DNA of 64,000 bases, taken from positions 186,001-250,000 of IMG/VR virus record IMGVR_UViG_3300027996_002186. One strand, given 5' to 3'. The position numbers were made by a program, and so were the translations under genes. The notes beneath the pieces were generated by a model that was not told the origin of the DNA, searched no databases, and was given only the letters and a program-made list of their open reading frames with translations. Shown here in pieces: positions 33,989 through 58,578 of the stretch (the stretch's first letter is position 1; each line of letters begins with the position of its first letter).

Positions 33989-35830
33989 TTAGATATTTGG
34001 ATTATCCGCTCGATATTTATCATATCTGTTAGCAATTTCAATTAAGAACTTATTTCTAACAATATCATTATTATTAAACTCGAATAAATTCAATTTATCC
34101 ATACCCGTTACCATTCCGATAAAATCTAGATATCCAGAATCTTTCTTCCTAACATCATATTGTGATGTATCTCCCATCATAACAGCTTTTGACTCTCTGC
34201 CTAATCGAGTTACCCACAACATTAATTTTTTAACAGATGCGTTTTGACACTCATCTAATAACATTACACAGTTATCATACGTTGATCCTCTCATGTAAGC
34301 TAGTGGCTCAAATATAATTTCTTCTGATGCGAATAAAAAATCTGTTTGTTGTCTTCCTATTATCTTTACGAATGTGTTGTAGTATGATCTTTTATATGGG
34401 TCTAACTTTTCCTGCATATCACCTGGTAAGAATCCTAAATTTTCACCACTTTCTTGTACCGGTTTTGTTATTATTATTCTTTCTACTTTCTTATCTGCTA
34501 GTAAGGCTAATGCCGTATAACACGTTGTGAATGTGTTGTGTGTAACAATATAATTATTGGTTAAATATAAGTGTGTAGGATGATCTACTTTTATACATTG
34601 AGCTTCTTTAACACCAATAAGACTCGCTGATACTATATACCTACATGGTTTGTATTTAGTCTTAGGTATAACTCGGTCAAATTTTCTCCTTAATGAAAAA
34701 GGATTTATATCTGGATTCATTTTAATTGTTAAATTATATGATGTTCTTCCTTGTTTCACCACACCTTTGTGTGTGTAATTTTCATTTCTTGGTGTTTGAT
34801 CTGTGGATATACCACCCAATGATTGTACCAATTCCTTTACATCTTCTATTAATTCCTTTGAGGTTGAGCAAAAGCTAACGTATGTACCATCTTTTGATAC
34901 CGTACCATCTGTATCCATTAACCCTCTTAACATAGATATTCTATTATCAACACTGTTATACTTATAACAATCTGGTATAAATTTTTCATATGATAATTTA
35001 CCCCATATTCCAATTTTTTTAAGATATTGTTTTAATTTATTCTCCCTTGTTGTTTTTTCCTTAACTAAGGCAAAGTCATAACCTCCTCTATCAGATACAC
35101 TTATATCATCATCTAATAAGTTTGTTATTTTTTCGATAATTTCAGAATCCGCTGTGCTAAATCCAACATGGTGTCTCAAACAACCATCACCTATTAAACA
35201 ACCCAATATATATGGATCAATTTCCAATTCTCTTTCAGTAAAATTTACAGGTGATGTAATTGGTATTGTGTGGTTTATTCTACCACGATTTGTATAAAGA
35301 GTGTCTATTATTTCACTGGTTGTTTTTGTGGATCCACTTTTTGGTGATTTATACCTATTCCTAACACCATTTACTGTTTTTGTCCATTCCCTATTATTTC
35401 TATCAGATTCAGTTTGTGTATTCCATAAATGATCGGAACAGCATTCCACTTTTGATCCATCAGAAAATGTTAATTCCCATATTTCCTTTTCACCTTGTGG
35501 GAAAACACCGGTCACTATCGTTGAGTTGCCATCCACAGACATGACCCTATCACCAATTTCCAAATCACCCATTTTTACCCATCCATCGGGTGTTAGTATT
35601 GGTGAATCTAGTGGCTGTGCCTTTGATGTACCAGCTGGGCCGTGAACGGCTGTTAATATACTGTTTCTTATTCCTTTATATAATAAGTGTTGTTTTGGTG
35701 TTAATTCTACTCTAGACTTATTAAATTCAGCTTTTGTTAATGAATTCTTCTTTCTTGATATTTTCTGAAATTCATAATCTTTTATTCCGGTTTTTACTTC
35801 TTCATTTTGATCTTGTTTTCTTCTACTCAT
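33989..35830 (-). CDS. phoH: PhoH-family ATPase containing an intein
   Basis: GPAGTSK|T P-loop, LGFLPGD, LAYMRG, LDECQN, GDTSQ, DIVRN. Confidence 0.9.
   Translation of the reverse strand: MSRRKQDQNEEVKTGIKDYEFQKISRKKNSLTKAEFNKSRVELTPKQHLLYKGIRNSILTAVHGPAGTSKAQPLDSPILTPDGWVKMGDLEIGDRVMSVDGNSTIVTGVFPQGEKEIWELTFSDGSKVECCSDHLWNTQTESDRNNREWTKTVNGVRNRYKSPKSGSTKTTSEIIDTLYTNRGRINHTIPITSPVNFTERELEIDPYILGCLIGDGCLRHHVGFSTADSEIIEKITNLLDDDISVSDRGGYDFALVKEKTTRENKLKQYLKKIGIWGKLSYEKFIPDCYKYNSVDNRISMLRGLMDTDGTVSKDGTYVSFCSTSKELIEDVKELVQSLGGISTDQTPRNENYTHKGVVKQGRTSYNLTIKMNPDINPFSLRRKFDRVIPKTKYKPCRYIVSASLIGVKEAQCIKVDHPTHLYLTNNYIVTHNTFTTCYTALALLADKKVERIIITKPVQESGENLGFLPGDMQEKLDPYKRSYYNTFVKIIGRQQTDFLFASEEIIFEPLAYMRGSTYDNCVMLLDECQNASVKKLMLWVTRLGRESKAVMMGDTSQYDVRKKDSGYLDFIGMVTGMDKLNLFEFNNNDIVRNKFLIEIANRYDKYRADNPNI
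34535..35620 (-). mobile_element. class 3 intein (362 aa) with LAGLIDADG homing endonuclease, in the PhoH P-loop
   Basis: Starts AQPLD, block B DHLW, block F AQCIKV, ends VTHN/T; LGCLIGDG and LRGLMDTDG motifs. Confidence 0.88.
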
Positions 35831-36153: not shown

Positions 36154-39100
36154 ATGTGGATATTCGATAATGATTATAATAAATGGTCTTCTAGTGGTGA
36201 TAATTTAGTTAAGAGTGAGTTTGATTACTTAAAACAAGAGTTATCATCTGTTAGATTCTATTCTAAGTGTTTGAGTGGTGCTGCATACTTACCTATGAAT
36301 AATATAAACAATATATATGATATATTAGGTGAATATAAGCCTAGAAACTGGTATATTGGTTTGGGTGGATCACCTTATAGTAATTCACTTATACCACCAC
36401 AAAATGCTGTTGAAATAACTAATGATTCATCATATGATTATTATACTAAATATTTATCTGAATATGGATTAACATTAAAAAACCTATTCACACCAAATAG
36501 ATTAATAAGTGATTCTATTAATAACTACATATATGTTGATGTTACCACAACAACTCAAATATTTGATTTATATGATCCTGTTATTAATAGGGTTATTGAT
36601 GGTACTAGACTTTTAGATGGTCATAGAATTTTAATAAAAGATCAAAAAACAACAGAAGTTTTACCAAATACGACTAACCCAGATGATTATTTCAGTGGTA
36701 ATTATACAGAAATTCAAAATTTCGGTACAACAATACAATATGAATATTATAGTAATGAAAATGGTATTTATAAATATGAAAATTTTTTATTATCAAAAGA
36801 ATCTGATTTAGATGATTATGAAGATTGTGTTAGGTTTAGTATTATTGCTAAGTTAGGTGCTAATAACAGAGAAAAGCAATTTCATTTATCTAGATTATTA
36901 AATGGATATTATCCAACATCCTCATTGGATCAACCAATGGAATTCATCGAAAAACATAATTGGTTACTAAGAAACAGAGTTGATTATAATAATTTATTTG
37001 AGATAAACTATTATGACGTTATAAAACATGGCGAACAATCTTATGAGATTGGTGGTATTACTTATAGTATACCAGAAAGAACTATATCTGTTGGTGAGTT
37101 TGGTGTTATACTAAATAACCAAGAGAATGTCTCTAATATTATTAGTAATAAGTATAAAGTTAATTTAAGAAGTATTTCACAAACATCTAAATATTATTGG
37201 ATTTGTGGTGATGGTGGTGTTTTATTGAAAGTTAGGAAACATGATTTTAATGTTGAGAGAATTGAAGTTGAAAACTTAACAACATCCAATTTAAAATCTG
37301 TTTCATTTTTTGATAATTTGAGAGGTGCTGTTGTCGGTGATTTAAATACTATTTTAGTTACAAATGATTCTGGATTTCATTGGGAAGTTATTAAAATACC
37401 AGACTTCGATACTTATTATTATAATAAGGTTATTTTTTATGACCCTAATAAGTTTTTCATAGGTGGTAATGTTGGTGTGTTTATTGAGTTTATAAAAGAT
37501 TTATCTGGATGGACAGCTTATAGAAGAAGAATATCTAGATTCATAGATGGATCAACACCACAAAACACAAGTGGTGAGGATGAGTATTTACTAGTTGATA
37601 ATATTAATGATATGTTATATACAAACATAGATACCTGGGGATTAACACATTCTCATAATTACGGTAGTCAATCGATTTCTGTTGATAAAGAATTGTTATT
37701 TATAGTTACTGATGATAGTAAATTTATAGTACACGATATTAATAATTCAATTCCCGACTATGATTTTCTTTATTTAGATTTTAGATCAAATGATATTGAA
37801 TTACATGAATATGGTGATATTAGAAATATATCTCGGAGAGAAGGAACTAATGATTTTTATTTTACTGGTATAAATGATATTAATATCGAAAGTGGTTTAT
37901 TTTCCTTCAATATTAATCTTTTTAGTGAAATTGGTGTTGAACATAATAACGATATTGAATACTCAAATACAATAACAACAACCGCTTCAGCTACATTTGA
38001 ATCAAATTTATATTCGAATAATACTTTCGATTATTTAGGTGATGAAATGATTTTATGTGGAAATGAATCTTTATTGAGAAGTTCAACTTATAGTACTACA
38101 TTTAATTTTGAAATTCTTGATGAGAATTTTGAGTCGAGGCTAAAGTCTAAGATGTTATTTTTGGATTATGATATGGGTTCTAAGCTAAATTTCTTCACAG
38201 ATGATGGTCAATATAGATTACCGAATTCCTTATCATTCCCGGCTGATTTATTTTCATCAACTTCTTCTATATCGCTTAGTTCGTTAGTTTATGGTGCTAC
38301 ATCACCTAGCTTTATGACACAATCAGAAGTTAGTTGGTTTGATTATTGGTCAGATAGGTATAAAACATTTGAATTTTATTCTACTGGGTTACCATTGGAT
38401 GAATCAACAAAAGTTTTATTATCCTCAGATTTTTCATATTCACCAACTCAATCAGAATTAATCATATCCTCAATAACAGATACTTTTTCTGATATAGAAA
38501 ATTTAGCTCCTAATATTTATAATAGAAGTCTTGGTAGATTTAATGGTGCTGGTATGACTGCTATATCAGCCCCATCATCATCATATGATTTATATTTATA
38601 TGATTATTTAATGGTTGCTAAAGTAGCAGATGATTATGAGGTTGTGGTTGGTGATGCTTTTGGATTAGAAAGTAATGTTGTTAATTCTGAATTTGTTGTT
38701 AATAAGATTGCTGAATTTGGTGGTGATAAATATTTATATATGTTTAGTGAGTTTAATCAAAACATTATAACCGAATTATCAACTACTACATATTCCGTGA
38801 CTCTGACAAATCTGAATAAATATTCTGATGTTGATGAGTTACAGGAAAGATTTAACACACATCCTATATCAAATGGTTATGAGTTAATACGTGGTTCATC
38901 AGTTAATAATGGGGTTTTGATGGACTTTGAGTTTGGAACAACAGCATCTTATATAAATTGGGTTGTTGATAACAACTTGGAATTCGACCCGATTTTCGGG
39001 GGTCGACCTGATGTGGCTAAAACATTAAACCAAAATACAACATATATAATAGAATCACCTGAGGTTGAGGGTGTTGATCTCGTATCCTTTTTATATAATT

Positions 39101-41871
39101 ACAGTAATGGAACTTTTGGTAGTTATGTATCTGGTACATATTCTAGTATAACGGTACAAGGTTTATCTGGTGTGACTTGGGTGGATATCGCCCTATTAAA
39201 TATACCTCTTATTAACTTAGTAGGGTGGGTTTCTTATAATATACCAGTAACATTTGGTTATAAAAAATTTAGATTTGTTTTACATCAGGGTTTTGTTCAG
39301 ACGACCATTCCTATCGGAAATCCTTCACAAAAGATTTATATAGATGATATTAAATTATCATCATCTACCAATTTAATTATAGATGGCAATAGTTATGGTA
39401 TAATAACCGATGATTCCGTCCCTAGTAATTTAACAATTAATCCTAAATTTAATAATTTAACATCGTATTATAATTTAGCTACAAACGTTATTACTAGTTC
39501 TGCTAGTTCTTACCTTTCTGGGGATTATCACACAATGTCATATACTGATGGATTCTTGAAATTCGGATATACACCTACTTACAATTTACTTGATTATTTA
39601 GAATCAATGAATGATATTGGTGATCCAAGTCCAGCATTCTATGGTGATAAAGAATATTATGCAATGCCTGATTATAGAGGAATTCCTTTACCTGGTATAA
39701 CTACGATAACTGATAGTGATGCTTATGTTGATTATAATGGTATAACATATTCAAATACTGCTGGTAATAAAATTTCATTTGGTGTAGATCTAAAACTAGA
39801 ATGGGAAAGTGTATTTATTAATACATTTGTTGATGTTAATCTATATGATTCAGCTACTTATTCCACTCCTTCATCAACAACAGAAAGATTGTTGGTTATG
39901 AAAAAATACTTTAATGAAGCGGATAATGTTTATGTTATTGAGTTTCATAAAAAACTAAATCTTGATTTAGGAACACCTCTTTATTTTGTTGATATAATAT
40001 CAAGAAGAAAACTCCACCAAATAAGTAGTGATCTACAAGAACTTAATAATATACAGAGGGGTAGATTGGAAACATCTGATGGTATATTCATAGGATCTTC
40101 TTTTGATAATTATGAAAGAGAATTAAACTTTAAGATACCGACAGATTCTTATGCTAAAGTAATGTTATCTGATGCTGAAACTATACAAGAGTTGAGTGCT
40201 ATATTTTATATTGATTATAAGAATGAGTTATCTATGAATATGACAAGATTAGAAAGAGAGTATAATATACCTATCCTAACGACCTCAAATTTTGGTGGGA
40301 ATTTATTTATTTCTTGTACAGAAAAGCACGATCTTAAAACAGGTGAGGGTATTGTTTTAGACTTTAATGGTGGTACTGGTTCTTCACAAGAATTAAATCA
40401 ACAATATTATGGATTCCACCCGGTTATTGTTGTAAATCAATACAACTTTTATCTAGATATTCCTTATGGTACAACTCCTTTAGTTGGTAATGACACTGGA
40501 TTTGTTAAATACACTAAAAAGGATCCTTTCTTGAATTATCAACCAGTTGATATAATAGATGTGGGTGTTGATAAAAAAGGTAAAAGGTCAATTGAATTAT
40601 CTATTGATAACGTAAAATTGACTAATGATGTTTATAGATTATCTGGTGTTGATTTTAGTAAATATAGATTTAGATTGGTTGATGGGTTAAATGTTGAACA
40701 ACTTGCAATTCAATTTCCTTGGATACTTGAAGCTGAGATATCAGAAGCTGTTTTGGGATTAGGAGGTGAAGGTGAGTTAGTTTGGTACTCAGGAACTTGG
40801 GAATGTGGTAGATGGTTTGGTGGTACTTGGTACTCAGGAACTTGGTTATCAGGAGATTGGTATGATGGTACTTGGTATTCTAAGAATATCAAAGATAATT
40901 ATATTTCTGTTGAAGTTGATGAAAAATCATCTGATATATCACAATCAACTTGGTTTGGTGGTAGGTGGTATGATGGTACTTGGGATAATGGTTTATGGGT
41001 AAATGGTAGATGGTATGATGGTACTTGGAACGGTGGGAATTGGTTTAAGGGTATTTGGAACGATGGTACTTGGAACGATGGAGTTTTTGGTGGAGGTGTT
41101 TGGATCCTTGGAATATGGAATAATGGTATATTTAACACTGATAACGAACCGGCTTACTGGTTAGATGGTGAATGGTTTGGTGGTGATTTTGAGAATGGTA
41201 TGTGGTATAATGGACTATTCGAAGCTAAAAATGATGAATCTAGGTTTGGTGTTAATGCTTATAATAGTAGAACAGCTACTTGGCATGCTGGTAATTGGGT
41301 TAGTGGTAGTTTCCATTCTAAATTAAATTTAAATGATGATGGTGAGTATGATGTATCCGATTCACATAATCTGAGTATTTGGAAAACAGGATCTTGGTTT
41401 AGTGGTGATTTCTATGGTGGTATAGCTTATAACATGGATTTTAAATCCGGAATTTGGCATGGTGGTATATTAGAAGATATTCAAGTTATTGGGTTTGGTT
41501 TTGATGCTGTTGGTGAAAATTATTTTACACTGAATGGTATTTTCAAATTTAATATAGGTGATGAGTTTAATATTATTGATAATCAAATAGGGAATTCTTA
41601 TTCTGTTGATTTTGGAAGTAATTCTGATCCTGGTAAGTATACCGTATTATATACAAATGAAGATAATGATAATAAATGGACAAAAGTTTATGTTGATAGA
41701 ACTATGACTTATAATCTTAATGCTCCTGTTGACTTAGGGTTAAGATTGGTTAGTAGGTTTAGATTCGTTAATTGGAAATCAGGTATATGGACAAATGGTA
41801 TATTAGATAGTGGATTATGGGAAGGTGGACTTTGGTATAATGGTGTTTTTGGTGATGCTACTTGGATGTAA
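36154..41871 (+). CDS. giant putative virion protein with YCF48/BNR-like propeller repeats and C-terminal W-x-x-G-x repeats
   Basis: 1905 aa; VGEFGVIL, CGDGGVLL, VGDLNTILVTNDSGFHW; GTWYSGTWLSGDWYDGTW tracts. Confidence 0.75.
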   Translation: MWIFDNDYNKWSSSGDNLVKSEFDYLKQELSSVRFYSKCLSGAAYLPMNNINNIYDILGEYKPRNWYIGLGGSPYSNSLIPPQNAVEITNDSSYDYYTKYLSEYGLTLKNLFTPNRLISDSINNYIYVDVTTTTQIFDLYDPVINRVIDGTRLLDGHRILIKDQKTTEVLPNTTNPDDYFSGNYTEIQNFGTTIQYEYYSNENGIYKYENFLLSKESDLDDYEDCVRFSIIAKLGANNREKQFHLSRLLNGYYPTSSLDQPMEFIEKHNWLLRNRVDYNNLFEINYYDVIKHGEQSYEIGGITYSIPERTISVGEFGVILNNQENVSNIISNKYKVNLRSISQTSKYYWICGDGGVLLKVRKHDFNVERIEVENLTTSNLKSVSFFDNLRGAVVGDLNTILVTNDSGFHWEVIKIPDFDTYYYNKVIFYDPNKFFIGGNVGVFIEFIKDLSGWTAYRRRISRFIDGSTPQNTSGEDEYLLVDNINDMLYTNIDTWGLTHSHNYGSQSISVDKELLFIVTDDSKFIVHDINNSIPDYDFLYLDFRSNDIELHEYGDIRNISRREGTNDFYFTGINDINIESGLFSFNINLFSEIGVEHNNDIEYSNTITTTASATFESNLYSNNTFDYLGDEMILCGNESLLRSSTYSTTFNFEILDENFESRLKSKMLFLDYDMGSKLNFFTDDGQYRLPNSLSFPADLFSSTSSISLSSLVYGATSPSFMTQSEVSWFDYWSDRYKTFEFYSTGLPLDESTKVLLSSDFSYSPTQSELIISSITDTFSDIENLAPNIYNRSLGRFNGAGMTAISAPSSSYDLYLYDYLMVAKVADDYEVVVGDAFGLESNVVNSEFVVNKIAEFGGDKYLYMFSEFNQNIITELSTTTYSVTLTNLNKYSDVDELQERFNTHPISNGYELIRGSSVNNGVLMDFEFGTTASYINWVVDNNLEFDPIFGGRPDVAKTLNQNTTYIIESPEVEGVDLVSFLYNYSNGTFGSYVSGTYSSITVQGLSGVTWVDIALLNIPLINLVGWVSYNIPVTFGYKKFRFVLHQGFVQTTIPIGNPSQKIYIDDIKLSSSTNLIIDGNSYGIITDDSVPSNLTINPKFNNLTSYYNLATNVITSSASSYLSGDYHTMSYTDGFLKFGYTPTYNLLDYLESMNDIGDPSPAFYGDKEYYAMPDYRGIPLPGITTITDSDAYVDYNGITYSNTAGNKISFGVDLKLEWESVFINTFVDVNLYDSATYSTPSSTTERLLVMKKYFNEADNVYVIEFHKKLNLDLGTPLYFVDIISRRKLHQISSDLQELNNIQRGRLETSDGIFIGSSFDNYERELNFKIPTDSYAKVMLSDAETIQELSAIFYIDYKNELSMNMTRLEREYNIPILTTSNFGGNLFISCTEKHDLKTGEGIVLDFNGGTGSSQELNQQYYGFHPVIVVNQYNFYLDIPYGTTPLVGNDTGFVKYTKKDPFLNYQPVDIIDVGVDKKGKRSIELSIDNVKLTNDVYRLSGVDFSKYRFRLVDGLNVEQLAIQFPWILEAEISEAVLGLGGEGELVWYSGTWECGRWFGGTWYSGTWLSGDWYDGTWYSKNIKDNYISVEVDEKSSDISQSTWFGGRWYDGTWDNGLWVNGRWYDGTWNGGNWFKGIWNDGTWNDGVFGGGVWILGIWNNGIFNTDNEPAYWLDGEWFGGDFENGMWYNGLFEAKNDESRFGVNAYNSRTATWHAGNWVSGSFHSKLNLNDDGEYDVSDSHNLSIWKTGSWFSGDFYGGIAYNMDFKSGIWHGGILEDIQVIGFGFDAVGENYFTLNGIFKFNIGDEFNIIDNQIGNSYSVDFGSNSDPGKYTVLYTNEDNDNKWTKVYVDRTMTYNLNAPVDLGLRLVSRFRFVNWKSGIWTNGILDSGLWEGGLWYNGVFGDATWM

Positions 41872-51926: not shown

Positions 51927-52121
51927 ATGTTAATAATAAAGGTTAAAGAGGGTGAGAAGATTGAAAGAGCTCTGAAAAGGTATAAAAATAAACACCGAAA
52001 AACGAAAGTTATGAATGAAGTTAGAGATAGAAAAAACTTCAAGAAAAAAAGTGTTAAGCGTAGAGAAGAAAAGAATAAAGCTATTTATATACAAAAGATT
52101 AAAGATAACGAAAAGGATTAA
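51927..52121 (+). CDS. rpsU: ribosomal protein bS21
   Basis: MLIIKVKEGEKIERALKRYK.K......EVRDRKNFKKKSVKRRE, Bacteroidota-type. Confidence 0.9.
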   Translation: MLIIKVKEGEKIERALKRYKNKHRKTKVMNEVRDRKNFKKKSVKRREEKNKAIYIQKIKDNEKD

Positions 52122-52555
52122 TGGGTTTTAATAAAAGATATATTAGAAAGGAAATGATACTTGAGAATGTTAGTAACATTAATTTTATATGTAAGTTGGT
52201 TAATGCTGATGCTTTAATAATTGATACTTGGTCAAGTAATTTTTATGATAATTTTAATTTCAAGTGCGTAAAATATAATAAAATACGAGAAGTTATTAAA
52301 AAGGATATAATATTTAATTCACATCATAATAATGTTTTAAATCATGAAAATTACAAAGAACTATTTAATTTATCAAATGTTCTTTTAAATCTTAAAACAG
52401 ATCCATCCTGGGTTGATGTTTTATTAACTGGTGATATTTTAAATGAAATTGATACTGATTTTATGAAGAAAAAGGATACACCAAAAGAAATAACTGGTAG
52501 ATTCGATGAGTTGGTAAAATATCACATCAAACTAATAGAGGAATATTATGGATAA
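52121..52555 (+). CDS. hypothetical protein
   Basis: 144 aa MGFNKRYI, coupled to rpsU. Confidence 0.7.
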   Translation: MGFNKRYIRKEMILENVSNINFICKLVNADALIIDTWSSNFYDNFNFKCVKYNKIREVIKKDIIFNSHHNNVLNHENYKELFNLSNVLLNLKTDPSWVDVLLTGDILNEIDTDFMKKKDTPKEITGRFDELVKYHIKLIEEYYG

Positions 52556-54323
52556 GAATAAAAACTACTATGATATACTTGGTGTTACTCATGATTCTGA
52601 TAACAATCAAATAAAAAAAGCTTATTATAAATTATCATTTACACACCATCCTGATAAAGGTGGTGATGCTATTATATTTGGTGAAATGACAGAAGCTTAT
52701 GATGTTCTTTGTGATGATGAAAAAATACGAGAAGAATATGATTGTAAAAGTAGATATGGTAAATGTTATGATGAATATTATGAATTATTTGATATCAATG
52801 TAGATTTTTCATATGATGATGGTAAAGAACAATTAGAGAAATTCAAAAGAAATGAAATAAATAACATTCAAATTGAAGTTGATGAAACATTTGATGGTAA
52901 AATTGAATATGTTAGATGGGTTAAGTGTAAACCTTGTGATGGTAGTGGAAAAGATATGTCGGGGAAAATACTTATTCGTGACTTAGAAGGTAATATTGTG
53001 AAAACATTTGATGCTGAGGATGGTTGTGATTTCTGTTTTGATGGGTATAATAATGTAATAACTGAAAATGGTCCAAAATTTATAAAAGATGTTAAATTGG
53101 GTGATTTCGTTCTATCCAGTAATAATAATTACTACGAAGTTGTAAACTTAATGAATAGGGATTATAGTGGTAACTTATATGATATTAATGTTTGTGGTAT
53201 TAATGTTGTTGGTGTTACTCCTAATCATAAATTTAATATTGTTAGATTTAAAAGAAATAAACAGGGTAGGGTTAATATAAATAATTATGATATATTGGAA
53301 TCATCAGTTGATGAAGTAACAACTGATGATTTTGTTTTATACCAAACACGTAAATATAAACCAAAATCAAAAATAATTCTAGAAAAAACAATAAATAGAG
53401 ATTTATCTGAAATACTAATAGATGATAACTTTGTTAAATTTATAGCTTGTTATATTACCGAGGGTAATACAAGAGATGATAGAGTTGTTGTTATAACAAT
53501 GCACATAGAAAAGGATAAACATTTGGTTGATTTTATAAAGCATTATATGGAGTCTATTGGTAATACCATTAAATGTTTTCAAAATGATTCCTGGGGTGAT
53601 AAGGTTATAAAAATTGAAATTTTTAATTCGCAATTATCAAAATTTTTAAAGAAATTTTGTGGCCATAGAGCTGAAAATAAATTTATAAATAATGATATAC
53701 TAGGTGCATCAGATCAGTCATTGCTAGAAACTCTATTATTGTGTGATGGATATCATAAGAAAAATTTAAGAACATATACAACTGTTTCTGAAAAATTAGG
53801 TAACCAAGTATTACACTTAGCTCTTGGATTAGGCCATAATGCTTCGATATCAAGGTATAAATCATATGTTGATAAACATGATGTTAATCACCAAGCTTGT
53901 TATAGAGTTTATATAACTTTTGTTGGAGATTTGACAAAAGTGGGTATTTATAATAAAAAAATAAAGGAAGGTACTTGTCTAAAAGTTAAGAGTATTAATA
54001 AGAGAGAAGTTTTAAATAATAAAGTATATAATATAACAGTTGATAAAACACATAAATATACTATTGATGGATTACTTGTTAATAACTGTGAGGGTACTGG
54101 TAAAAGCTATGATGGTTCAGATTGTTCATTTTGTGTTGGTCAAGGAAAAGTTGGATTAAAACCTTGTGATAAATGTGAAGGTAATGGTAGAACAATGGGT
54201 AATCAAAAATTGTCAGGTATTAAACTTACTGATGATGAAACTAAATTAGATACTATGGGTCATTTTTCTAAGAATGGTGTAGGATACTTACTTTTAGTGA
54301 AAAAAATCAAAAATAATTCATAA
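52548..54323 (+). CDS. dnaJ: DnaJ-like co-chaperone (J domain plus four CxxCxGxG motifs) containing an intein
   Basis: YYDILGV...IKKAY...HPDK; CKPCDGSG, CDF|CEGTG, CSFCVGQG, CDKCEGNG. Confidence 0.85.
   Translation: MDKNKNYYDILGVTHDSDNNQIKKAYYKLSFTHHPDKGGDAIIFGEMTEAYDVLCDDEKIREEYDCKSRYGKCYDEYYELFDINVDFSYDDGKEQLEKFKRNEINNIQIEVDETFDGKIEYVRWVKCKPCDGSGKDMSGKILIRDLEGNIVKTFDAEDGCDFCFDGYNNVITENGPKFIKDVKLGDFVLSSNNNYYEVVNLMNRDYSGNLYDINVCGINVVGVTPNHKFNIVRFKRNKQGRVNINNYDILESSVDEVTTDDFVLYQTRKYKPKSKIILEKTINRDLSEILIDDNFVKFIACYITEGNTRDDRVVVITMHIEKDKHLVDFIKHYMESIGNTIKCFQNDSWGDKVIKIEIFNSQLSKFLKKFCGHRAENKFINNDILGASDQSLLETLLLCDGYHKKNLRTYTTVSEKLGNQVLHLALGLGHNASISRYKSYVDKHDVNHQACYRVYITFVGDLTKVGIYNKKIKEGTCLKVKSINKREVLNNKVYNITVDKTHKYTIDGLLVNNCEGTGKSYDGSDCSFCVGQGKVGLKPCDKCEGNGRTMGNQKLSGIKLTDDETKLDTMGHFSKNGVGYLLLVKKIKNNS
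53034..54086 (+). mobile_element. intein (351 aa) with LAGLIDADG endonuclease, inserted in the DnaJ zinc finger
   Basis: Starts CFDG..V.TENG...IKDVKLGD.V, block B VTPNHKF, ends VYNITV...Y...GLLVNN/C; IACYITEG and LLLCDG motifs. Confidence 0.88.
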
Positions 54324-54405
54324 GTCTATATTCGTCTGTGTCTCAGATTCACCAGAGTAAAGAGTTATCAATATCCGGAATTTAGTTAAATTATTTAAAG
54401 TTCAC

Positions 54406-55068
54406 TTATCCTATAATCTTGTCTCTGTTTGAACACCACCAATCAATATCCGTATCTATGAATATATTTGCATTGATAGGAGCTCCTTGAAATAGCTTAT
54501 GATTCTGATTTGACTGTCTCATTTTAGGGTGAAATTCTCTCCCTGCATGGAAACATATCTTTACCAAGTTAGTACCAACCGCTTCAACTTCATTTCGTTT
54601 CCAAAAATCTGAATCCAGTTCTGTGTATTTGAATGAAAAACTCGGCTGGCGAATGGAATCGGGTGTTCTGGTATCATTCTTCTTTTTTGAATTAAACCTG
54701 ATCATATCAGTTTTTTCGCGTTCAATACCTCCTTGTACCGAATACATTTCATGTGTTATTACCTCAATGTGTTTAGGTTTCCATGAAATATCTACAAGAA
54801 GTTTATGCTGATTCAGTGCCTTCTCGTATAAAACATTCATCGTACTTTCCAACTCTTCTATATTTTCATAATGTCCATAAAGATACAAATCTACATCCCA
54901 CGTATGCCAATCAAATAAACATTTACCATATATGTAAAGGTCGAATTTATCCAGGATATCAGTATTTTCACGGATATCGATCAAGTAATTTTTTAACCTA
55001 TCATAGGTAGGTCTTAACCATGGTGTGGTAGTTTCTACTGACCCTATCTTATAATGAAATTTCCCCAT
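54406..55068 (-). CDS. possible Pol-beta-superfamily nucleotidyltransferase
   Basis: LYIYGKC...TWDVDL...LLVDI pattern (hG.../DxD/D). Confidence 0.5.
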   Translation of the reverse strand: MGKFHYKIGSVETTTPWLRPTYDRLKNYLIDIRENTDILDKFDLYIYGKCLFDWHTWDVDLYLYGHYENIEELESTMNVLYEKALNQHKLLVDISWKPKHIEVITHEMYSVQGGIEREKTDMIRFNSKKKNDTRTPDSIRQPSFSFKYTELDSDFWKRNEVEAVGTNLVKICFHAGREFHPKMRQSNQNHKLFQGAPINANIFIDTDIDWWCSNRDKIIG

Positions 55069-55092: not shown

Positions 55093-58000
55093 TCAAGAAC
55101 CTCCGCCACCACCACCTGATGATTCTCCATCATTATTATCACTTGGATCATTGTATGATGATTCTGTTGATAAACTATCCAAACCAATAACGATATTATC
55201 GATAAAGCTGAATTGATTATCTTCATAATCTATAAATGGTGCTACTCCTTGAAAGGGAATTTGTACAGCTTTGTTTATATAATCATCAGTTATGTATTTG
55301 AAAAAAGGAGCTTTATCTATCTCATAGAATTTGATATTATCCATAGATGTTGTTAAATCACCATTAGCTAGTAATAAAATATTTAAATCTCTTCTATTGA
55401 AGAAATATTCATACTTTCTTGTTTTATTTGTTTGTATGTGATTTACAAATTCTTGATCTGGGAAAGCTTTATATGGTACTACAGCAGCAACATCTAAAGT
55501 ATTTAATAAATAAATACTTGGTTTTTCTCCATCATAAACATTAAGAGGATTTTGTGGATTACCACCTCCGGTTAACCCCTCAAAGGATAATAAATCAAAT
55601 TCAACCATTGAATATCTTTTCTTTTCAATAGTAACATTTGTATTATTTAGTTTGAAACTACCAGAAGCTGAACCAGAACCAGTTTCTTTTATAATATCTA
55701 TTTGGAATGATTCAGTTGAATCATTCCTTTCTAACATAAGTTCATTTTCCGATAATCCGGATGATAAACTATATGTCCATCCATCATTTATAAAGGTACC
55801 TAATCCACCATTAAAGTTCCTGGTTTGATAACCAAAAGGAAAAGATGGTCCTGTAGCAGAGCTAAATGGATCATTAAATTCTGAGAAGTCACCCAAGAAA
55901 TCTTCATAAATTTCATATTTAGTACCTAGTGAATAAATAGTATTTCTTAAATTATAACTATTTCTAAAAGATGATTTACTATCAAGAACATCTTCTGTTA
56001 TGTGTCCGTATAAATTATTCTGTGAGTATTTCCCAAACCCAAACTCATATATAGTTTGACTTCTTCCTAGGTTGGTAGCTGATTCATCCAACCACTTAAC
56101 ATCAATCCACGAATTATAGCTATAAACGGATTCTAAATTAGATGTTTCTAGAACAGTACTCGGAGCAACATTATTATCAATAAAATCAAAGTTTTGTATA
56201 ACTGCAGTTCCGGTTCTACTACTAACTAGACCACCTTCTGATGTAGAAGAGGCTCCAAATTGTTTATCAATCACAATCATATAATCATCAACAACAGCAA
56301 TAACATTTGATTCTCCATTGTAGTGTATATTAAAATTTTGGTCATCCATATTAATATTAACTTTATCACCAACCACAAATCCATGTGCTGTTGCTCCAAA
56401 TGTTAACCCTAGTGTGTTTGGTGAGGTTTCTTGCCACCAATAAGTATCAACAAAACTAGATTCATGGTAGTTCCCGTAGAAGTGACCACCATCATACCTA
56501 CCGTCTATCCAGTGTGTGTTATACATTTCTGTTATATATGGAAATCCTTTAAATAGTCCGTTATTCCAAATACCTTCAAAATACCCATTTAAGAAACCAC
56601 CATTCAACCAAACATTTTTTGTTATTTTTATCTTATGGTTATCAGAATCTTTTTCAATTCTTCTAAGCGGAAATGTATTATTAAAATCAACAACAATACT
56701 ATTATCAAATCCTCCTTCACCAACTATGTTAACAAATAATACAGTGAAGTAATTTGTCATTAACTTTCTATTTTCATTAATATCTATACCAACTATATTT
56801 CCTATTGACACTTTATCACCAACTTTAAAGTATGATACTACCTCTTTTCTTCCGGATATTTTTATCCTCCATCTTATATTTGTTGTATTCATCATCTTTG
56901 ATATTTCTACATCATCGAATTCTTGAACATCACCATCAACTCGCCAACCACTATTCCAAACACCATTTTCCCAAATACCTTGTTTGAATATCCCATTTCC
57001 TACTTTAGCTTTTAATGAATTAAGATTTATAATATTACCATATAAATTTGAAAAATATCCAGGGAATCCAGTTGCTCCAAATAACTCAGATAATGTTACA
57101 CCAGTTCCCGGAGGAACCGATGCTGAAAAGGTCAATACTTCATGTAATGTATTTTCATTAACAACATTAACGCTATAAGTCGCATCATATGAACCACCAA
57201 TAACACAAAGTTCTGTTGGTTCTTCATATAAATCTGTTTCTGTGAATAAAAATTGTTCATTGTTATCATTTTCTTGGTATGCGCCATCTATTGAAAAATT
57301 ACTCAATAGTATCGATGTCGAATAGGCCCAATCACCACTTTGAGTAAACCCATCATTATTACCCCTAAATAGGAGATATTGATTTCCTTTTAAACCAAAA
57401 TATTTATAATTACCATCAGCGTCTATTTTACCCAAAAATTGACCACCACTCAATATATTCTCAAAATCTGTGATGTTATTAGTTTTTAAATTATCTCCCA
57501 AACTATCAATTAAATACATATCAACATATGAATCATCACTAAATCCAGCATCAGCATCAAATGATATATTAAATGATGCGTATGGTATAAACCTTGATAT
57601 ATAGTTACTTGATGTGAATCCAGTTAAGCATGGTTGATAGGGTAAAGGAATCTGTTCATCTATTCCGAGGTAAGTAAAAATGAAATAACCCGGGTAGTAT
57701 CCGTAAGGTAATCTATCTGAGTAAGCATCCTGTCCGTCAAAGTCTACCGGAATACCATCTGGTGGTGCAGATATGAATTCAATTGGTCTTTGTGGTTGAA
57801 ATCTAAAACTATCATTAGTAAAATCATATTTCCACCCAGCTGAATATATTTCATCAGCCTCACCAACATCACCTTGGTTGGAACTCAAAGCCCACCCTTG
57901 TACAAACCAGTCCATTTCTACCACTTTGAATTCTTTAATGGTTGCTGTTCCATAATAATTGGGAAATGCTGCAGATCCAAATTCATCAAAACTAGATTCG

Positions 58001-58578
58001 TAGGTTACAAGATCGGGTCTTCCGAGAGGCGATCGATAAGCATTTGTTGTTGTATTACCAGGACTGTTAGAATTGACATCTACAATATTTTGGGGGTTTA
58101 TAATGTTACTTGGACTAGAGAAATATTGTAACGTAACGTCACCCTCACTCAATGGTCTGCTATCCTTTCTCCAATCTTCTGGAAAATTAAATGGTGGAAA
58201 GAATGGTAACTCCGCAAGTGTGTGTGTTTTATATTCAAAATATCCAGTGTTCGGTTGAAGTATTGATAAATTTCCTGTGGTGTCGAAAGCCCAAGGTGTC
58301 AGTATTTTTAGATATCTATTGCTAGATAAATTATCTATTCCAGAAGGAACTCCCCCGCCACCTCTGGATGTGAAAGCATTAACCTTTGTTAAAAATAAGT
58401 AATTTTTATTAGAATTATACGTTGTAGCGCCATTAGTTTCGGGCCAAAAAAGCATTTTCCGTACAGGTAGATTAGTTGCTCCATTATTTAGTGTGGTCAT
58501 ACCCGTGCCGTTATCATCCCAAAATCGACCTGTAAATGGAGGAATGTTATTGTTAAGAAATTCTGTTTGCCATGCCAT
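55093..58578 (-). CDS. large putative virion protein with W-x-x-G-x repeats
   Basis: 1161 aa; GIWENGVWNSGW, WLNGGFLNGYFEGIWNNG; TAATATATA-gttt-ATG. Confidence 0.7.
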   Translation of the reverse strand: MAWQTEFLNNNIPPFTGRFWDDNGTGMTTLNNGATNLPVRKMLFWPETNGATTYNSNKNYLFLTKVNAFTSRGGGGVPSGIDNLSSNRYLKILTPWAFDTTGNLSILQPNTGYFEYKTHTLAELPFFPPFNFPEDWRKDSRPLSEGDVTLQYFSSPSNIINPQNIVDVNSNSPGNTTTNAYRSPLGRPDLVTYESSFDEFGSAAFPNYYGTATIKEFKVVEMDWFVQGWALSSNQGDVGEADEIYSAGWKYDFTNDSFRFQPQRPIEFISAPPDGIPVDFDGQDAYSDRLPYGYYPGYFIFTYLGIDEQIPLPYQPCLTGFTSSNYISRFIPYASFNISFDADAGFSDDSYVDMYLIDSLGDNLKTNNITDFENILSGGQFLGKIDADGNYKYFGLKGNQYLLFRGNNDGFTQSGDWAYSTSILLSNFSIDGAYQENDNNEQFLFTETDLYEEPTELCVIGGSYDATYSVNVVNENTLHEVLTFSASVPPGTGVTLSELFGATGFPGYFSNLYGNIINLNSLKAKVGNGIFKQGIWENGVWNSGWRVDGDVQEFDDVEISKMMNTTNIRWRIKISGRKEVVSYFKVGDKVSIGNIVGIDINENRKLMTNYFTVLFVNIVGEGGFDNSIVVDFNNTFPLRRIEKDSDNHKIKITKNVWLNGGFLNGYFEGIWNNGLFKGFPYITEMYNTHWIDGRYDGGHFYGNYHESSFVDTYWWQETSPNTLGLTFGATAHGFVVGDKVNINMDDQNFNIHYNGESNVIAVVDDYMIVIDKQFGASSTSEGGLVSSRTGTAVIQNFDFIDNNVAPSTVLETSNLESVYSYNSWIDVKWLDESATNLGRSQTIYEFGFGKYSQNNLYGHITEDVLDSKSSFRNSYNLRNTIYSLGTKYEIYEDFLGDFSEFNDPFSSATGPSFPFGYQTRNFNGGLGTFINDGWTYSLSSGLSENELMLERNDSTESFQIDIIKETGSGSASGSFKLNNTNVTIEKKRYSMVEFDLLSFEGLTGGGNPQNPLNVYDGEKPSIYLLNTLDVAAVVPYKAFPDQEFVNHIQTNKTRKYEYFFNRRDLNILLLANGDLTTSMDNIKFYEIDKAPFFKYITDDYINKAVQIPFQGVAPFIDYEDNQFSFIDNIVIGLDSLSTESSYNDPSDNNDGESSGGGGGGS

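What the first reader, a model, noticed from the sequence alone, without database searches (positions are those of the whole stretch)
52548..54323. Intein inserted into the zinc finger of a DnaJ co-chaperone
Seen: a 351-aa intein (C1...NN, penultimate Asn rather than His) splits CDF|CEGTG, so the +1 nucleophile is a zinc-ligand Cys and the second CxxCxGxG motif exists only after splicing. The spliced product is 240 aa. Established: inteins cluster in replication, recombination and nucleotide enzymes, so a chaperone host is atypical. Inference: splicing could be zinc- or redox-conditional.
Basis: partly seen in the sequence, partly recalled or inferred. Interest (0 to 1): 0.65.

Follow-up and report, generated by a model that had tools for sequence, protein, structure and literature searches.

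The report
Mobile intein splitting a phage DnaJ zinc finger
A self-splicing, mobile protein insert (an intein carrying a homing endonuclease) sits exactly inside a zinc-binding motif of a small DnaJ-like co-chaperone of a huge marine phage; about 5% of related phage genes carry the same insert, it seems undescribed in the literature, and it is a good natural candidate for testing zinc- or redox-controlled protein splicing.

Summary
ORF 52548-54323 (+) encodes 591 aa: a J domain with an HPD motif, then a DnaJ-type zinc finger whose second CxxCxGxG motif is split (CDF|CEGTG) by a 351-aa intein (nt 53034-54086). The intein has Cys1, block B TPNH, two LAGLIDADG motifs, and ends Asn-Asn before a +1 Cys.

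- **Boundaries:** Intein-less alleles in related huge phages read CDFCEGSGK without interruption.
- **Fold:** The predicted fold matches endonuclease-bearing VMA-type inteins (TliVMA, PI-SceI).
- **Not a one-off:** 28 metagenomic clusters carry the same intein at the same site (52-83% identity). All splicing residues, including the Asn-Asn end, are invariant. At least 500 clusters lack it.
- **Mobility:**
  - Intein presence needs 8-14 gains or losses on the extein tree.
  - Intein and extein trees conflict.
  - Two contigs about 99.8% identical around the gene differ only by the exact intein.
  - An intein-less relative co-occurs with the intein allele in one sample.
- **Selection:** dN/dS is 0.1-0.2 in the exteins, the intein and the endonuclease.

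Best reading: an active class 1 homing intein in a new host protein, placed there because the target DNA is highly conserved. The precursor keeps a Cys(-3)-x-x-Cys1 junction like the known MoaA redox trap. Zinc- or redox-gated splicing is therefore plausible but untested. It is a new member of a known kind, of moderate interest.

The parts
52548..54323 (+). Precursor ORF, 591 aa (J-protein with intein), including the stop codon
52548..53033 (+). N-extein, 162 aa. Ends ...DGCDF.
   Evidence: It aligns to DnaJ_bact profile positions 1-157.
52563..52742 (+). J domain (aa 6-65) with HPD at 52647-52655
   Evidence: Pfam DnaJ E 9e-17. HPD is invariant in 27 homologues.
52926..52949 (+). Zinc-finger motif 1, CKPCDGSG
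53025..53033 (+). N-terminal half of zinc-finger motif 2 (C160-D-F). C160 lies at -3 from the intein.
   Evidence: C160 is invariant.
53034..54086 (+). Intein, 351 aa: HINT splicing domain with an inserted LAGLIDADG homing endonuclease
   Evidence: - Family scans.
- AF2 pLDDT about 85-95 over the intein.
- Foldseek: 7qsu at E 8e-20, plus PI-SceI and PI-PfuI.
- Exactly absent from intein-less alleles.
53034..53063 (+). Block A, CFDGYNNVIT (Cys1 nucleophile)
   Evidence: Cys1 is invariant, 27/27.
53208..53237 (+). Block B, VGVTPNHKFN (TxxH)
   Evidence: T224 and H227 are invariant.
53433..53471 (+). LAGLIDADG motif 1, VKFIACYITEGNT (acidic Glu305)
   Evidence: Glu in 24/26 homologues, Lys in two.
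53721..53756 (+). LAGLIDADG motif 2, LLETLLLCDGYH (acidic Asp400)
   Evidence: Asp in 26/26 homologues. Hom_end aa 397-469 and LAGLIDADG_3.
54021..54086 (+). Blocks F and G, KVYNITVDKTHKYTIDGLLVNN: terminal Asn513, penultimate Asn512
   Evidence: TIGR01443 aa 492-514, above its cut-off. N512 and N513 are invariant.
54087..54320 (+). C-extein, 78 aa.
- +1 Cys514 and CEGTG (54087-54101) form the C-terminal half of motif 2.
- Motif 3, CSFCVGQG, is at 54123-54146.
- Motif 4, CDKCEGNG, is at 54165-54188.
   Evidence: It aligns to DnaJ profile positions about 182-219.
52121..52555 (+). Upstream 144-aa gene of unknown function. Its end overlaps the J-protein start by 8 nt, and it is syntenic in relatives.
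   Evidence: No Pfam hit.

Best explanation
This is a genuine, splicing-competent class 1 intein. It has a Cys1 nucleophile, block B Thr/His, a C-terminal Asn and a +1 Cys. It carries an intact LAGLIDADG homing endonuclease.

It is inserted in frame between Phe162 and the second Cys of the second CxxCxGxG motif of a short (240 aa) J-domain/zinc-finger co-chaperone. That protein is encoded by a 483-kb marine huge phage.

Proposed mechanism, each step inferred by analogy with characterised class 1 inteins:
1. The gene is transcribed and translated as one 591-aa precursor.
2. Cys163 makes the N-S acyl shift at Phe162.
3. Cys514 (+1) takes over the N-extein by transesterification.
4. Asn513 cyclises and releases the intein.
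5. An S-N shift restores CDFCEGTGK, so the zinc finger can form only after splicing.

The freed intein is a homing endonuclease. During co-infection it presumably cuts the very conserved DNA encoding ...DGCDF|CEGxGK in intein-less alleles and copies itself in.

Its position in the zinc finger is best explained by target-site conservation and by the availability of a Cys as +1 nucleophile, not by a need of the host. The element persists in this phage gene family through a continuing cycle of homing and loss.

Shown here: anatomy, fold, exact boundaries, conservation, purifying selection, and patchy, incongruent presence/absence. Inferred: actual splicing, endonuclease cleavage, and the absence of an adaptive role.
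For: - Anatomy and HMM hits.
- Fold: AF2 pLDDT is 85-95 over the intein. Best PDB matches are HEN-bearing inteins: TliVMA 7qsu (E 8e-20, TM 0.72 by target), then PI-SceI, PhoVMA and PI-PfuI.
- Exact boundaries come from natural intein-less alleles.
- 28 clusters carry the intein at the same site. Cys1, T/H of block B, Asn-Asn, +1 Cys and Cys(-3) are invariant. The LAGLIDADG acids are kept in 24/26 and 26/26.
- dN/dS for the window against P0002 is 0.10 for exteins, 0.18 for the intein and 0.16 for the endonuclease. Against P0003 the values are 0.20, 0.19 and 0.17. Host protein and intein are therefore both under purifying selection, which implies that the insert is removed.
- Mobility:
  - At least 505 intein-less clusters against 28 with the intein.
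  - 14 changes of state on the extein tree, at least 8 forced by well-supported branches.
  - Intein and extein trees conflict, with AU p 0.0009 and 0.014.
  - L012 and L013 differ by 5 mismatches in 2,145 nt upstream and 6 in 222 nt downstream, yet by the exact 1056-nt intein.
  - A contig skipping exactly 1053 nt co-occurs with the intein allele in one brine metagenome.
- The homing site is nearly invariant at the DNA level in 7 alleles.
- The intein allele is held by 19 runs from about 15 marine studies.
- A 218-nt contig in an RNA library crosses the extein/intein junction.
Against: - No biochemical evidence of splicing or cleavage exists.
- Two assisting positions are unusual: the penultimate residue is Asn where His is usual, and block F reads VYNITV with Asn where Asp is usual. 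Both are invariant in the family. Splicing without the penultimate His is documented (Chen, Benner and Perler 2000, cited in PMC4031507).
- Pfam Intein_splicing scores 33.9 bits, just under its 35.8 cut-off, in the protein scan.
- Intein and extein pairwise identities are correlated (r 0.76), and the intein lineage is as diverged as its host. Much of the history is therefore vertical, and loss may be as frequent as gain.
- The AU test groups were chosen after the trees had been seen.
- The RNA-library contig could be contaminating DNA.
- A purely selfish role cannot be told from a regulatory one by sequence.
Confidence: 0.8

Rival explanations
1. The intein is a conditional switch, adaptive or at least physiologically relevant.

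In the precursor the intein's Cys1 occupies the place of the zinc-ligand Cys, giving C160-D-F-C163. It could be held in two ways:
- in a Cys(-3)-Cys1 disulfide, a redox trap;
- in a zinc site together with C514, C526 and C529.

Either would mean the co-chaperone matures only at a given thiol redox or zinc state during infection. This is compatible with the main explanation for anatomy and mobility. It differs only on whether splicing is gated.
For: - The native CxxC across the N-terminal junction is invariant.
- The same arrangement blocks step 1 in the engineered Ssp DnaE CPGC junction and in the native Pyrococcus abyssi MoaA intein (PMC10663303; PMC11766414).
- Zinc inhibits several inteins by binding active-site residues, including DnaB in vivo (PMC10663303).
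- Five cysteines (C160, C163, C514, C526, C529) lie next to the two splice junctions in sequence.
- The intein has been kept for a long time: pairwise identity falls to 47% with splicing residues intact.
- The phage has a separate complete DnaK/DnaJ/GrpE set, so a delay in this paralogue would be tolerable.
Against: - No experiment has been done.
- The CxxC is an automatic consequence of a Cys1 intein entering before the second Cys of a CxxC, so it needs no selection.
- About 95% of alleles do without the intein. Near-identical phages differ only by it, as expected of a dispensable parasite.
- The endonuclease is maintained, which points to mobility as the force that keeps the element.
- The bacterial cytoplasm is reducing.
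- The AF2 models of the zinc-finger parts are too poor to judge geometry.
Confidence: 0.2
2. The insert is a decayed, non-splicing HINT remnant. The interrupted gene is then a pseudogene or makes only a J-domain fusion with no working zinc finger.
For: The penultimate His and the usual block F Asp are absent. The intein HMM scores are marginal.
Against: - All essential residues are invariant in 26 homologues that have diverged to about 50% identity.
- dN/dS is 0.10-0.20 in the exteins of intein-bearing alleles and 0.18-0.21 in the intein.
- No frameshifts or stops occur in any full-length member.
- The fold is confidently intein-like.
- The Asn-Asn end is itself invariant, which is not what decay looks like.
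Confidence: 0.04
3. Assembly artefact: a chimeric contig joining a J-protein gene with an unrelated intein-bearing gene.
For: None beyond the metagenomic origin of the record.
Against: - The same stretch is held at 71-100% of sampled words by 19 runs from about 15 studies.
- Independent contigs from other samples carry the same architecture in frame.
- Contigs bridge both junctions.
Confidence: 0.01

Closest known systems
Homing-endonuclease-bearing class 1 inteins of the VMA type (PI-SceI; TliVMA and PhoVMA inteins, PDB 7qsu, 7qss, 7qst, 1vde, 1ef0)
   Same: - HINT splicing domain with a LAGLIDADG endonuclease inserted.
- Cys1, block B TxxH, C-terminal Asn and +1 Cys.
- They are the best structural matches.
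- In-frame insertion at a conserved host motif.
   Different: - Only 11-19% sequence identity, and no sequence-level PDB hit.
- The host is a phage J-protein, not an ATPase.
- The penultimate residue is Asn, not His, and block F has Asn where Asp is usual.
- Activity is not tested.
Pyrococcus abyssi MoaA intein and the engineered Ssp DnaE CPGC 'redox trap' (Callahan et al. 2011, as described in PMC10663303 and PMC11766414)
   Same: - An N-extein Cys at -3 and the intein's catalytic Cys1 form a CxxC across the N-terminal splice junction.
- The host is a Cys-rich metal-binding protein whose function needs the reduced, metal-loaded state.
   Different: - Here the CxxC is half of a structural zinc site of a co-chaperone, and the +1 nucleophile is itself the displaced ligand.
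- No disulfide or redox dependence has been shown.
- This intein carries an endonuclease and is demonstrably polymorphic in populations.
- I could not read the primary paper.
Zinc-responsive inteins (Ssp DnaE, Mtu RecA, Msm DnaB, Cne Prp8; PMC10663303, PMC7360933)
   Same: Catalytic Cys residues that zinc can bind. This offers a possible reversible block of splicing.
   Different: In those cases zinc binds intein active-site residues by chance of chemistry. Here the exteins themselves form a dedicated zinc-binding domain around the junction. The zinc effect is untested.
Type I (class A) DnaJ/Hsp40, e.g. E. coli DnaJ and the phage's own 363-aa DnaJ (G000 C1, about 352.9-354.0 kb)
   Same: - J domain with HPD.
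- Four CxxCxGxG motifs.
- Flanking beta strands that align to the DnaJ_bact profile.
- From my memory of the DnaJ cysteine-rich domain structure, motifs 2 and 3 form zinc centre II. This was not tested here.
   Different: - 240 aa only.
- No G/F region and no DnaJ_C (CTD II or dimerisation) match.
- The PF00684 score is below the gathering cut-off.
- There is a long spacer of about 25 residues between motifs 1 and 2.
Chlamydomonas eugametos ClpP intein (Wang and Liu 1997, cited in PMC4031507)
   Same: An intein in a protein-quality-control host rather than a replication protein. From my memory of that work, not checked here, it also lacks the penultimate His.
   Different: - A chloroplast gene and a different host fold.
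- Only the title of that paper was seen.
- No relation in sequence was tested.

Membership tests
Class 1 intein (HINT splicing domain) | Nucleophile (Cys/Ser) at intein position 1 | tested here: met
   Cys163, invariant in 27/27 homologues
Class 1 intein (HINT splicing domain) | Block B TxxH | tested here: met
   TPNH at aa 224-227, with T and H invariant
Class 1 intein (HINT splicing domain) | C-terminal Asn followed by a +1 Cys/Ser/Thr | tested here: met
   Asn513 | Cys514, invariant in 26/26. TIGR01443 is above its cut-off.
Class 1 intein (HINT splicing domain) | Penultimate His (common assisting residue, not obligatory) | tested here: not met
   Asn512 in all 26 members. Splicing without it is documented in the literature (PMC4031507).
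Class 1 intein (HINT splicing domain) | HINT fold | tested here: met
   The AF2 model is confident over aa 163-513. Foldseek top hits are inteins at E 1e-14 to 8e-20. Pfam Intein_splicing scores 33.9 bits against a cut-off of 35.8.
Class 1 intein (HINT splicing domain) | In-frame insertion absent from orthologues, with exact boundaries restoring the host motif | tested here: met
   Intein-less alleles read CDFCEG. There is an exact 1056-nt difference between near-identical contigs and a 1053-nt skip joint.
Class 1 intein (HINT splicing domain) | Autocatalytic protein splicing | not testable with these tools
   Inferred only, from purifying selection on exteins and intein
LAGLIDADG homing endonuclease | Two LAGLIDADG motifs, each ending in an acidic residue followed by Gly | tested here: met
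   ...YITEG and ...LLCDG. Glu in 24/26 and Asp in 26/26. Hom_end is above its cut-off and LAGLIDADG_3 is matched.
LAGLIDADG homing endonuclease | Site-specific cleavage of the empty allele, and homing | tested here: inconclusive
   Cleavage is not testable. Population evidence fits mobility: patchy distribution, tree conflict and near-identical intein+/intein- pairs.
Type I (class A) DnaJ/Hsp40 | J domain with HPD | tested here: met
   Pfam DnaJ 9e-17. HPD is invariant.
Type I (class A) DnaJ/Hsp40 | Gly/Phe-rich region after the J domain | tested here: not met
   Residues 66-126 are not G/F-rich. The phage's other DnaJ does have one.
Type I (class A) DnaJ/Hsp40 | Four CxxCxGxG repeats (zinc-finger-like region) | tested here: met
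   - Three motifs are intact and one is split in the precursor.
- 115 of 121 intein-less alleles have four.
- All 75 scanned members match PF00684, though below its gathering score.
- Zinc binding itself was not tested.
Type I (class A) DnaJ/Hsp40 | C-terminal substrate-binding domains I and II with a dimerisation motif (DnaJ_C) | tested here: not met
   There is no PF01556 hit in the window protein or in 75 intein-less relatives. The protein ends about 44 aa after motif 4. Fold hits to full DnaJs have low TM, about 0.2.

The most novel reading that the evidence does not exclude
The intein is a natural zinc/redox gate on a viral co-chaperone. In the precursor the intein's Cys1 stands in for the zinc-ligand Cys. 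It forms either a Cys(-3)-Cys1 disulfide or a decoy zinc site with motif 3 and the +1 Cys. The J-protein would then mature only when the infected cell's thiol or zinc state permits. That would be a post-translational timer or stress sensor in a phage-encoded Hsp70 system.
Probability: 0.15. Interest if true: 0.75.

Novelty: new member of a known kind. Interest (0 to 1): 0.45.

Why it matters
- **A new host and site:** It adds a protein-folding co-chaperone, and a structural zinc site, to the list of intein hosts. That list is dominated by replication, recombination and nucleotide enzymes.
- **A homing cycle caught in the wild:** The data show a homing cycle in action in uncultured huge marine phages. 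They include empty alleles, full alleles, alleles with a mutated or deleted endonuclease, and near-identical genomes that differ only by the intein.
- **A test case for conditional splicing:** The junction chemistry (native Cys(-3)xxCys1, a zinc-ligand +1 Cys, an invariant Asn-Asn end) makes this a ready natural case for redox- or metal-conditional protein splicing. It could also be a source of a new orthogonal intein for protein engineering.
- **A practical warning for annotation:** These 590-aa proteins are filed as 'hypothetical', and family scans nearly miss the intein.

Tried and rejected
- **PDB sequence search with the intein** found nothing. Only the fold search identified relatives.
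- **PDB profile search with 75 intein-less alleles** matched J domains only. It could not be used to align the zinc motifs to a solved DnaJ.
- **AF2 models** of the precursor and of the intein-less allele P0055 are poor (pLDDT below 60) over the zinc finger. Foldseek hits to full-length DnaJs have TM about 0.2. The pairing of motifs 2 and 3 in one zinc centre therefore rests on textbook DnaJ knowledge, not on a test here.
- **Model coordinates are not exposed**, so Cys-Cys distances at the junction could not be measured.
- **A genome search with PF14890** found only this intein and missed the PhoH intein, which LAGLIDADG_3 picked up. 'Only one intein in the genome' was rejected.
- **Papers not available:** Callahan et al. 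2011 is not held. The supplements of Novikova et al. are not held.
- **Considered and rejected:** assembly chimera, a decayed pseudo-intein, and an intron rather than an intein. The frame is continuous and an RNA-library contig crosses the junction.
- **Not used:** the big representative search, because the word searches already resolved the family and its nearest outsiders; and complex prediction, because no binding claim is made.
- **No spliced model:** The exteins were searched separately by reference. Natural intein-less homologues stood in for the spliced product. For trees and dN/dS the intein columns were only dropped from alignments of natural sequences.
Full report
**1. The observation**

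The window is AT-rich (26-36% G+C). It is part of a 483,262-bp virus record judged 98% complete, at positions 186001-250000.

ORF 52548..54323 (+) encodes 591 aa. Its layout is as follows:
- N-extein: aa 1-162, nt 52548-53033, ending ...DGCDF.
- Intein: 351 aa, aa 163-513, nt 53034-54086, beginning CFDGYNNV and ending LLVNN.
- C-extein: 78 aa, nt 54087-54320, beginning CEGTGK.

Family scans give these results:

| Model | Region (aa) | Result |
|---|---|---|
| DnaJ (J domain) | 6-65 | E 9e-17 |
| Intein_splicing | 193-513 | 3e-8; 33.9 bits, just under the 35.8 cut-off |
| Hom_end | 397-469 | above cut-off |
| LAGLIDADG_3 | 392-447 | matched, 21.1 bits, just under the 22.5 cut-off |
| TIGR01443 intein_Cterm | 492-514 | above cut-off |

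The N-extein aligns to DnaJ_bact profile positions 1-157. The C-extein aligns to positions about 182-219. The two exteins are therefore the two halves of a DnaJ-type zinc-finger region.

**2. Proof of the boundaries**

A translated search of phage genomes found the same gene in two huge uncultured phages: LR745206.1 (634,780 bp, 83% identity) and LR756502.1 (642,428 bp, 65%). The match covered only the exteins, in a span of about 710 nt.

The ORFs there are 239 and 236 aa and read ...DGCDFCEGSGK... without interruption. The same 144-aa gene lies upstream. At the DNA level the site ...GATGGTTGTGATTTC|TGTGARGG... is almost invariant in four intein-less and three intein-bearing alleles.

The junction is formally ambiguous by one Cys codon. 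Only the reading C1...N|C fits intein chemistry.

**3. Fold**

An AF2 model of the precursor, built on an alignment of 28 homologues, has mean pLDDT 80 and 85-95 over the intein. Its best PDB matches are endonuclease-bearing inteins:
- TliVMA, 7qsu: E 8e-20, TM 0.72 by target.
- PI-SceI, PhoVMA and PI-PfuI.
- Then free LAGLIDADG enzymes such as I-DmoI.

Sequence alone finds no solved relative.

**4. It is a family, not a singleton**

A word search with the whole precursor found 25 further clusters of 585-598 aa, 50-83% identical over 99% of the length. All have DnaJ plus intein domains, and all are unnamed or 'hypothetical'. A search with words drawn from the intein alone brought the total to 28 clusters.

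The gap to other inteins is deep. The nearest are 27% identical and sit in a GHMP kinase and a prohead protease.

In the alignment every member has the insert at the same place. Residue conservation is as follows:
- Invariant: Cys(-3), Cys1, block B Thr and His, the block F Asn in VYNITV, the penultimate Asn, the terminal Asn and the +1 Cys.
- LAGLIDADG acids: Glu in 24/26 (Lys in P0004 and P0013) and Asp in 26/26.
- One member (P0023) has lost most of the endonuclease.

The Asn-Asn end is thus a stable trait of the lineage, not decay. Splicing without a penultimate His is documented (Chen, Benner and Perler 2000, cited in PMC4031507).

**5. Selection**

Mean pairwise identity among 24 full-length members:

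| Region | Mean pairwise identity |
|---|---|
| N-extein | 0.55 |
| C-extein | 0.60 |
| Intein (whole) | 0.61 |
| Endonuclease part | 0.60 |

dN/dS values:

| Comparison | Exteins | Intein | Endonuclease |
|---|---|---|---|
| Window vs P0002 | 0.10 | 0.18 | 0.16 |
| Window vs P0003 | 0.20 | 0.19 | 0.17 |

The host protein is under purifying selection in alleles that carry a 351-aa insert in a zinc-binding loop. That is hard to explain unless the insert is removed. The maintained endonuclease points to continuing mobility.

**6. Mobility**

- **Counts.** A search with the N-extein found at least 505 clusters. The best 120 are intein-less proteins of 223-249 aa (one 153-aa fragment). They lie on contigs up to 642 kb, and 115 of 121 have four CxxCxGxx motifs, with motif 2 mostly CDFCE. 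The intein therefore occupies about 5% of known alleles.
- **Patchiness.** On an extein tree of 146 rows, with gap-rich intein columns dropped by trimming, intein presence needs 14 changes. At least 8 are forced by well-supported branches. The shuffled mean is 24.3, and 0 of 500 shuffles are as low.
- **Tree conflict.** The intein tree groups the window's intein with P0002, P0004 and P0005 (support 100/99). The extein tree groups the window with P0002, P0003 and P0013 (97/94). Each data set rejects the other's grouping, with AU p 0.0009 and 0.014. The groups were named after the trees had been seen.
- **Near-identical pair.** Contigs L012 (intein-bearing, 61.5 kb) and L013 (intein-less, 16 kb) come from different samples. 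They differ at 5 of 2,145 nt upstream of the site and 6 of 222 nt downstream, yet by the exact 1056-nt intein. Two of the differences are synonymous changes in the -1 and -8 codons.
- **Co-occurrence.** In one brine metagenome a short contig joins 53032 to 54086, skipping exactly 1053 nt. It carries 7 differences in 94 nt, so it is a related intein-less allele present in the same sample as the intein allele. The short side of the joint is only 26 nt, so this is supporting evidence, not decisive.

Extein and intein distances are nonetheless correlated (r 0.76). The picture is a long-resident intein lineage that mostly travels with its host gene, with repeated loss and local homing.

**7. Ecology and expression**

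The stretch 52000-54800 is held at 71-100% of sampled words by 19 DNA runs of marine, seawater and brine metagenomes. These come from about 15 studies between 2012 and 2021.

A metatranscriptome library holds a 218-nt contig, 100% identical, that crosses the N-extein/intein junction. This fits an insert present in the mRNA. DNA carry-over cannot be excluded.

**8. The host protein**

After splicing the protein would have these parts:
- a J domain with HPD;
- a 60-aa linker that is not G/F-rich;
- four CxxCxGxG motifs: CKPCDGSG, CDF|CEGTG, CSFCVGQG and CDKCEGNG;
- about 44 further residues.

All 75 intein-less relatives scanned match PF00684, but below its gathering score, and none matches DnaJ_C. 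It is therefore a short J-protein with a DnaJ-type zinc finger, not an orthodox type I DnaJ.

The phage also encodes a full Hsp70, a canonical intein-free 363-aa DnaJ (DnaJ, CXXCXGXG and DnaJ_C all above cut-off) and GrpE. These lie 115-120 kb downstream of the window gene. The likely partner of the short J-protein is the phage or host Hsp70. This is inference, and no complex was predicted.

From textbook knowledge of the DnaJ cysteine-rich domain, motifs 2 and 3 make zinc centre II. The models here were too poor over this region to check that.

**9. How it most likely works**

Shown: anatomy, fold, boundaries, conservation, selection and patchy distribution.

Inferred: a standard class 1 splicing pathway (Cys163, Cys514, Asn513) that restores CDFCEGTGK. 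The freed intein would then act as a LAGLIDADG endonuclease on the empty site during co-infection.

The location is explained by the extreme conservation of the DNA that encodes the motif and by the availability of a Cys as +1 nucleophile.

**10.

Because the intein begins with Cys, the precursor keeps a CxxC (C160-D-F-C163) across the N-terminal junction. This is the geometry of the engineered Ssp DnaE CPGC redox trap and of the native P. abyssi MoaA intein, where a Cys(-3)-Cys1 disulfide blocks step 1 until it is reduced (PMC10663303; PMC11766414). Zinc inhibition of inteins through active-site residues is also established (PMC10663303).

Against an adaptive role:
- the CxxC is an automatic by-product of the insertion site;
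- about 95% of alleles lack the intein;
- near-identical phages differ only by it.

I put about 0.2 on physiologically relevant gating.

**11. Novelty**

Novikova et al. 2016 report that 61.5% of bacterial and 66.9% of archaeal intein hosts are in COG category L. Their lists of top hosts contain no DnaJ (PMC4760082).

Full-text searches for intein with DnaJ, with Hsp40, with J-domain/zinc finger and with huge phages found no description of a natural DnaJ intein. Work on jumbo gut phages reports inteins in nrdD and polymerase genes, not in chaperones (PMC12880540).

The element is a canonical kind of thing (a HEN-bearing class 1 intein) in a new host and site. It is a new member of a known kind, of moderate interest.

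- The exteins were searched separately by reference, and natural intein-less proteins stood in for the product.
- Intein columns were only dropped from alignments of natural sequences for trees and dN/dS.

Noticed in passing
window 33989-35830 (-), insert about 34535-35620: A second intein lies in the same window: a 613-aa PhoH-like ATPase (Pfam PhoH 2e-47 over aa 432-603) whose Walker A is split, GPAGTSK|...|T, by a 362-aa insert with LAGLIDADG_3 and Hom_end hits. By eye the insert starts with Ala and shows ...HLW (block B), QCIKV (block F Cys) and VTHN|T. That is a class 3-like WCT signature. PhoH is a known intein host (PMC4760082). The PF14890 genome search missed it.
   Followed up: partly
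window 51927-52121 (+): A phage-encoded ribosomal protein bS21 homologue (64 aa, Pfam Ribosomal_S21 2.9e-12). It lies two genes upstream of the J-protein. The order bS21 - 144-aa ORF - J-protein is kept in relatives (L015, L016).
   Followed up: partly
window 52121-52555 (+): A conserved 144-aa gene with no Pfam hit. Its end overlaps the J-protein start by 8 nt and it is always found next to it (window, L001, L002, L015, L016). It could be a functional partner of the J-protein.
   Followed up: no
G000 C1:352.9-362.3 kb (outside the window; loci L005, L006, L009): The phage carries its own complete Hsp70 system: DnaK (629-aa frame, PF00012 2e-246), a canonical 363-aa type I DnaJ with a G/F region and DnaJ_C, and GrpE. 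None is interrupted by an intein.
   Followed up: partly
P0023, P0004, P0013 (alignment A1): Stages of endonuclease decay appear within the family. P0023 (477 aa) has lost most of the endonuclease domain. P0004 and P0013 have Lys in place of the catalytic Glu of LAGLIDADG motif 1, while all splicing residues are kept.
   Followed up: partly
P0025 (alignment A1, columns about 269-341): One intein-bearing homologue has an extra insertion of about 73 aa in the N-extein, between zinc motifs 1 and 2. Its nature is unknown.
   Followed up: no
P0028 (356 aa, alignment A1): An intein-less allele is called with an N-terminal extension of about 115 aa. By eye the extension contains an ...IAIECQGEQH... 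motif reminiscent of PD-(D/E)XK/Vsr-like endonucleases. It may be a free-standing endonuclease gene fused by gene calling.
   Followed up: no
L001 4787-5386, L002 5035-5595, L012 5241-5801, L015 2697-2924: In relatives the gene downstream of the J-protein carries a type IX secretion C-terminal sorting tail (Por_Secre_tail). This suggests Bacteroidota hosts for this phage group. In the window that place is taken by a 220-aa minus-strand ORF (54406-55068) with no Pfam hit.
   Followed up: no
L012 942-1280 (-) versus L013 1105-1344 (+): The near-identical pair of contigs with and without the intein also differs about 2.1 kb upstream. The intein-bearing contig has a DUF723 gene where the other has an unrelated 79-aa gene. 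This is a second small replacement between otherwise 99.8% identical stretches.
   Followed up: no
window 36154-41871 (+) and 55093-58578 (-): Very large ORFs of 1905 aa and 1161 aa. The first has a C-terminal region full of short Gly/Trp-rich repeats (GxWxxGxW...). They are presumably structural or fibre proteins.
   Followed up: no
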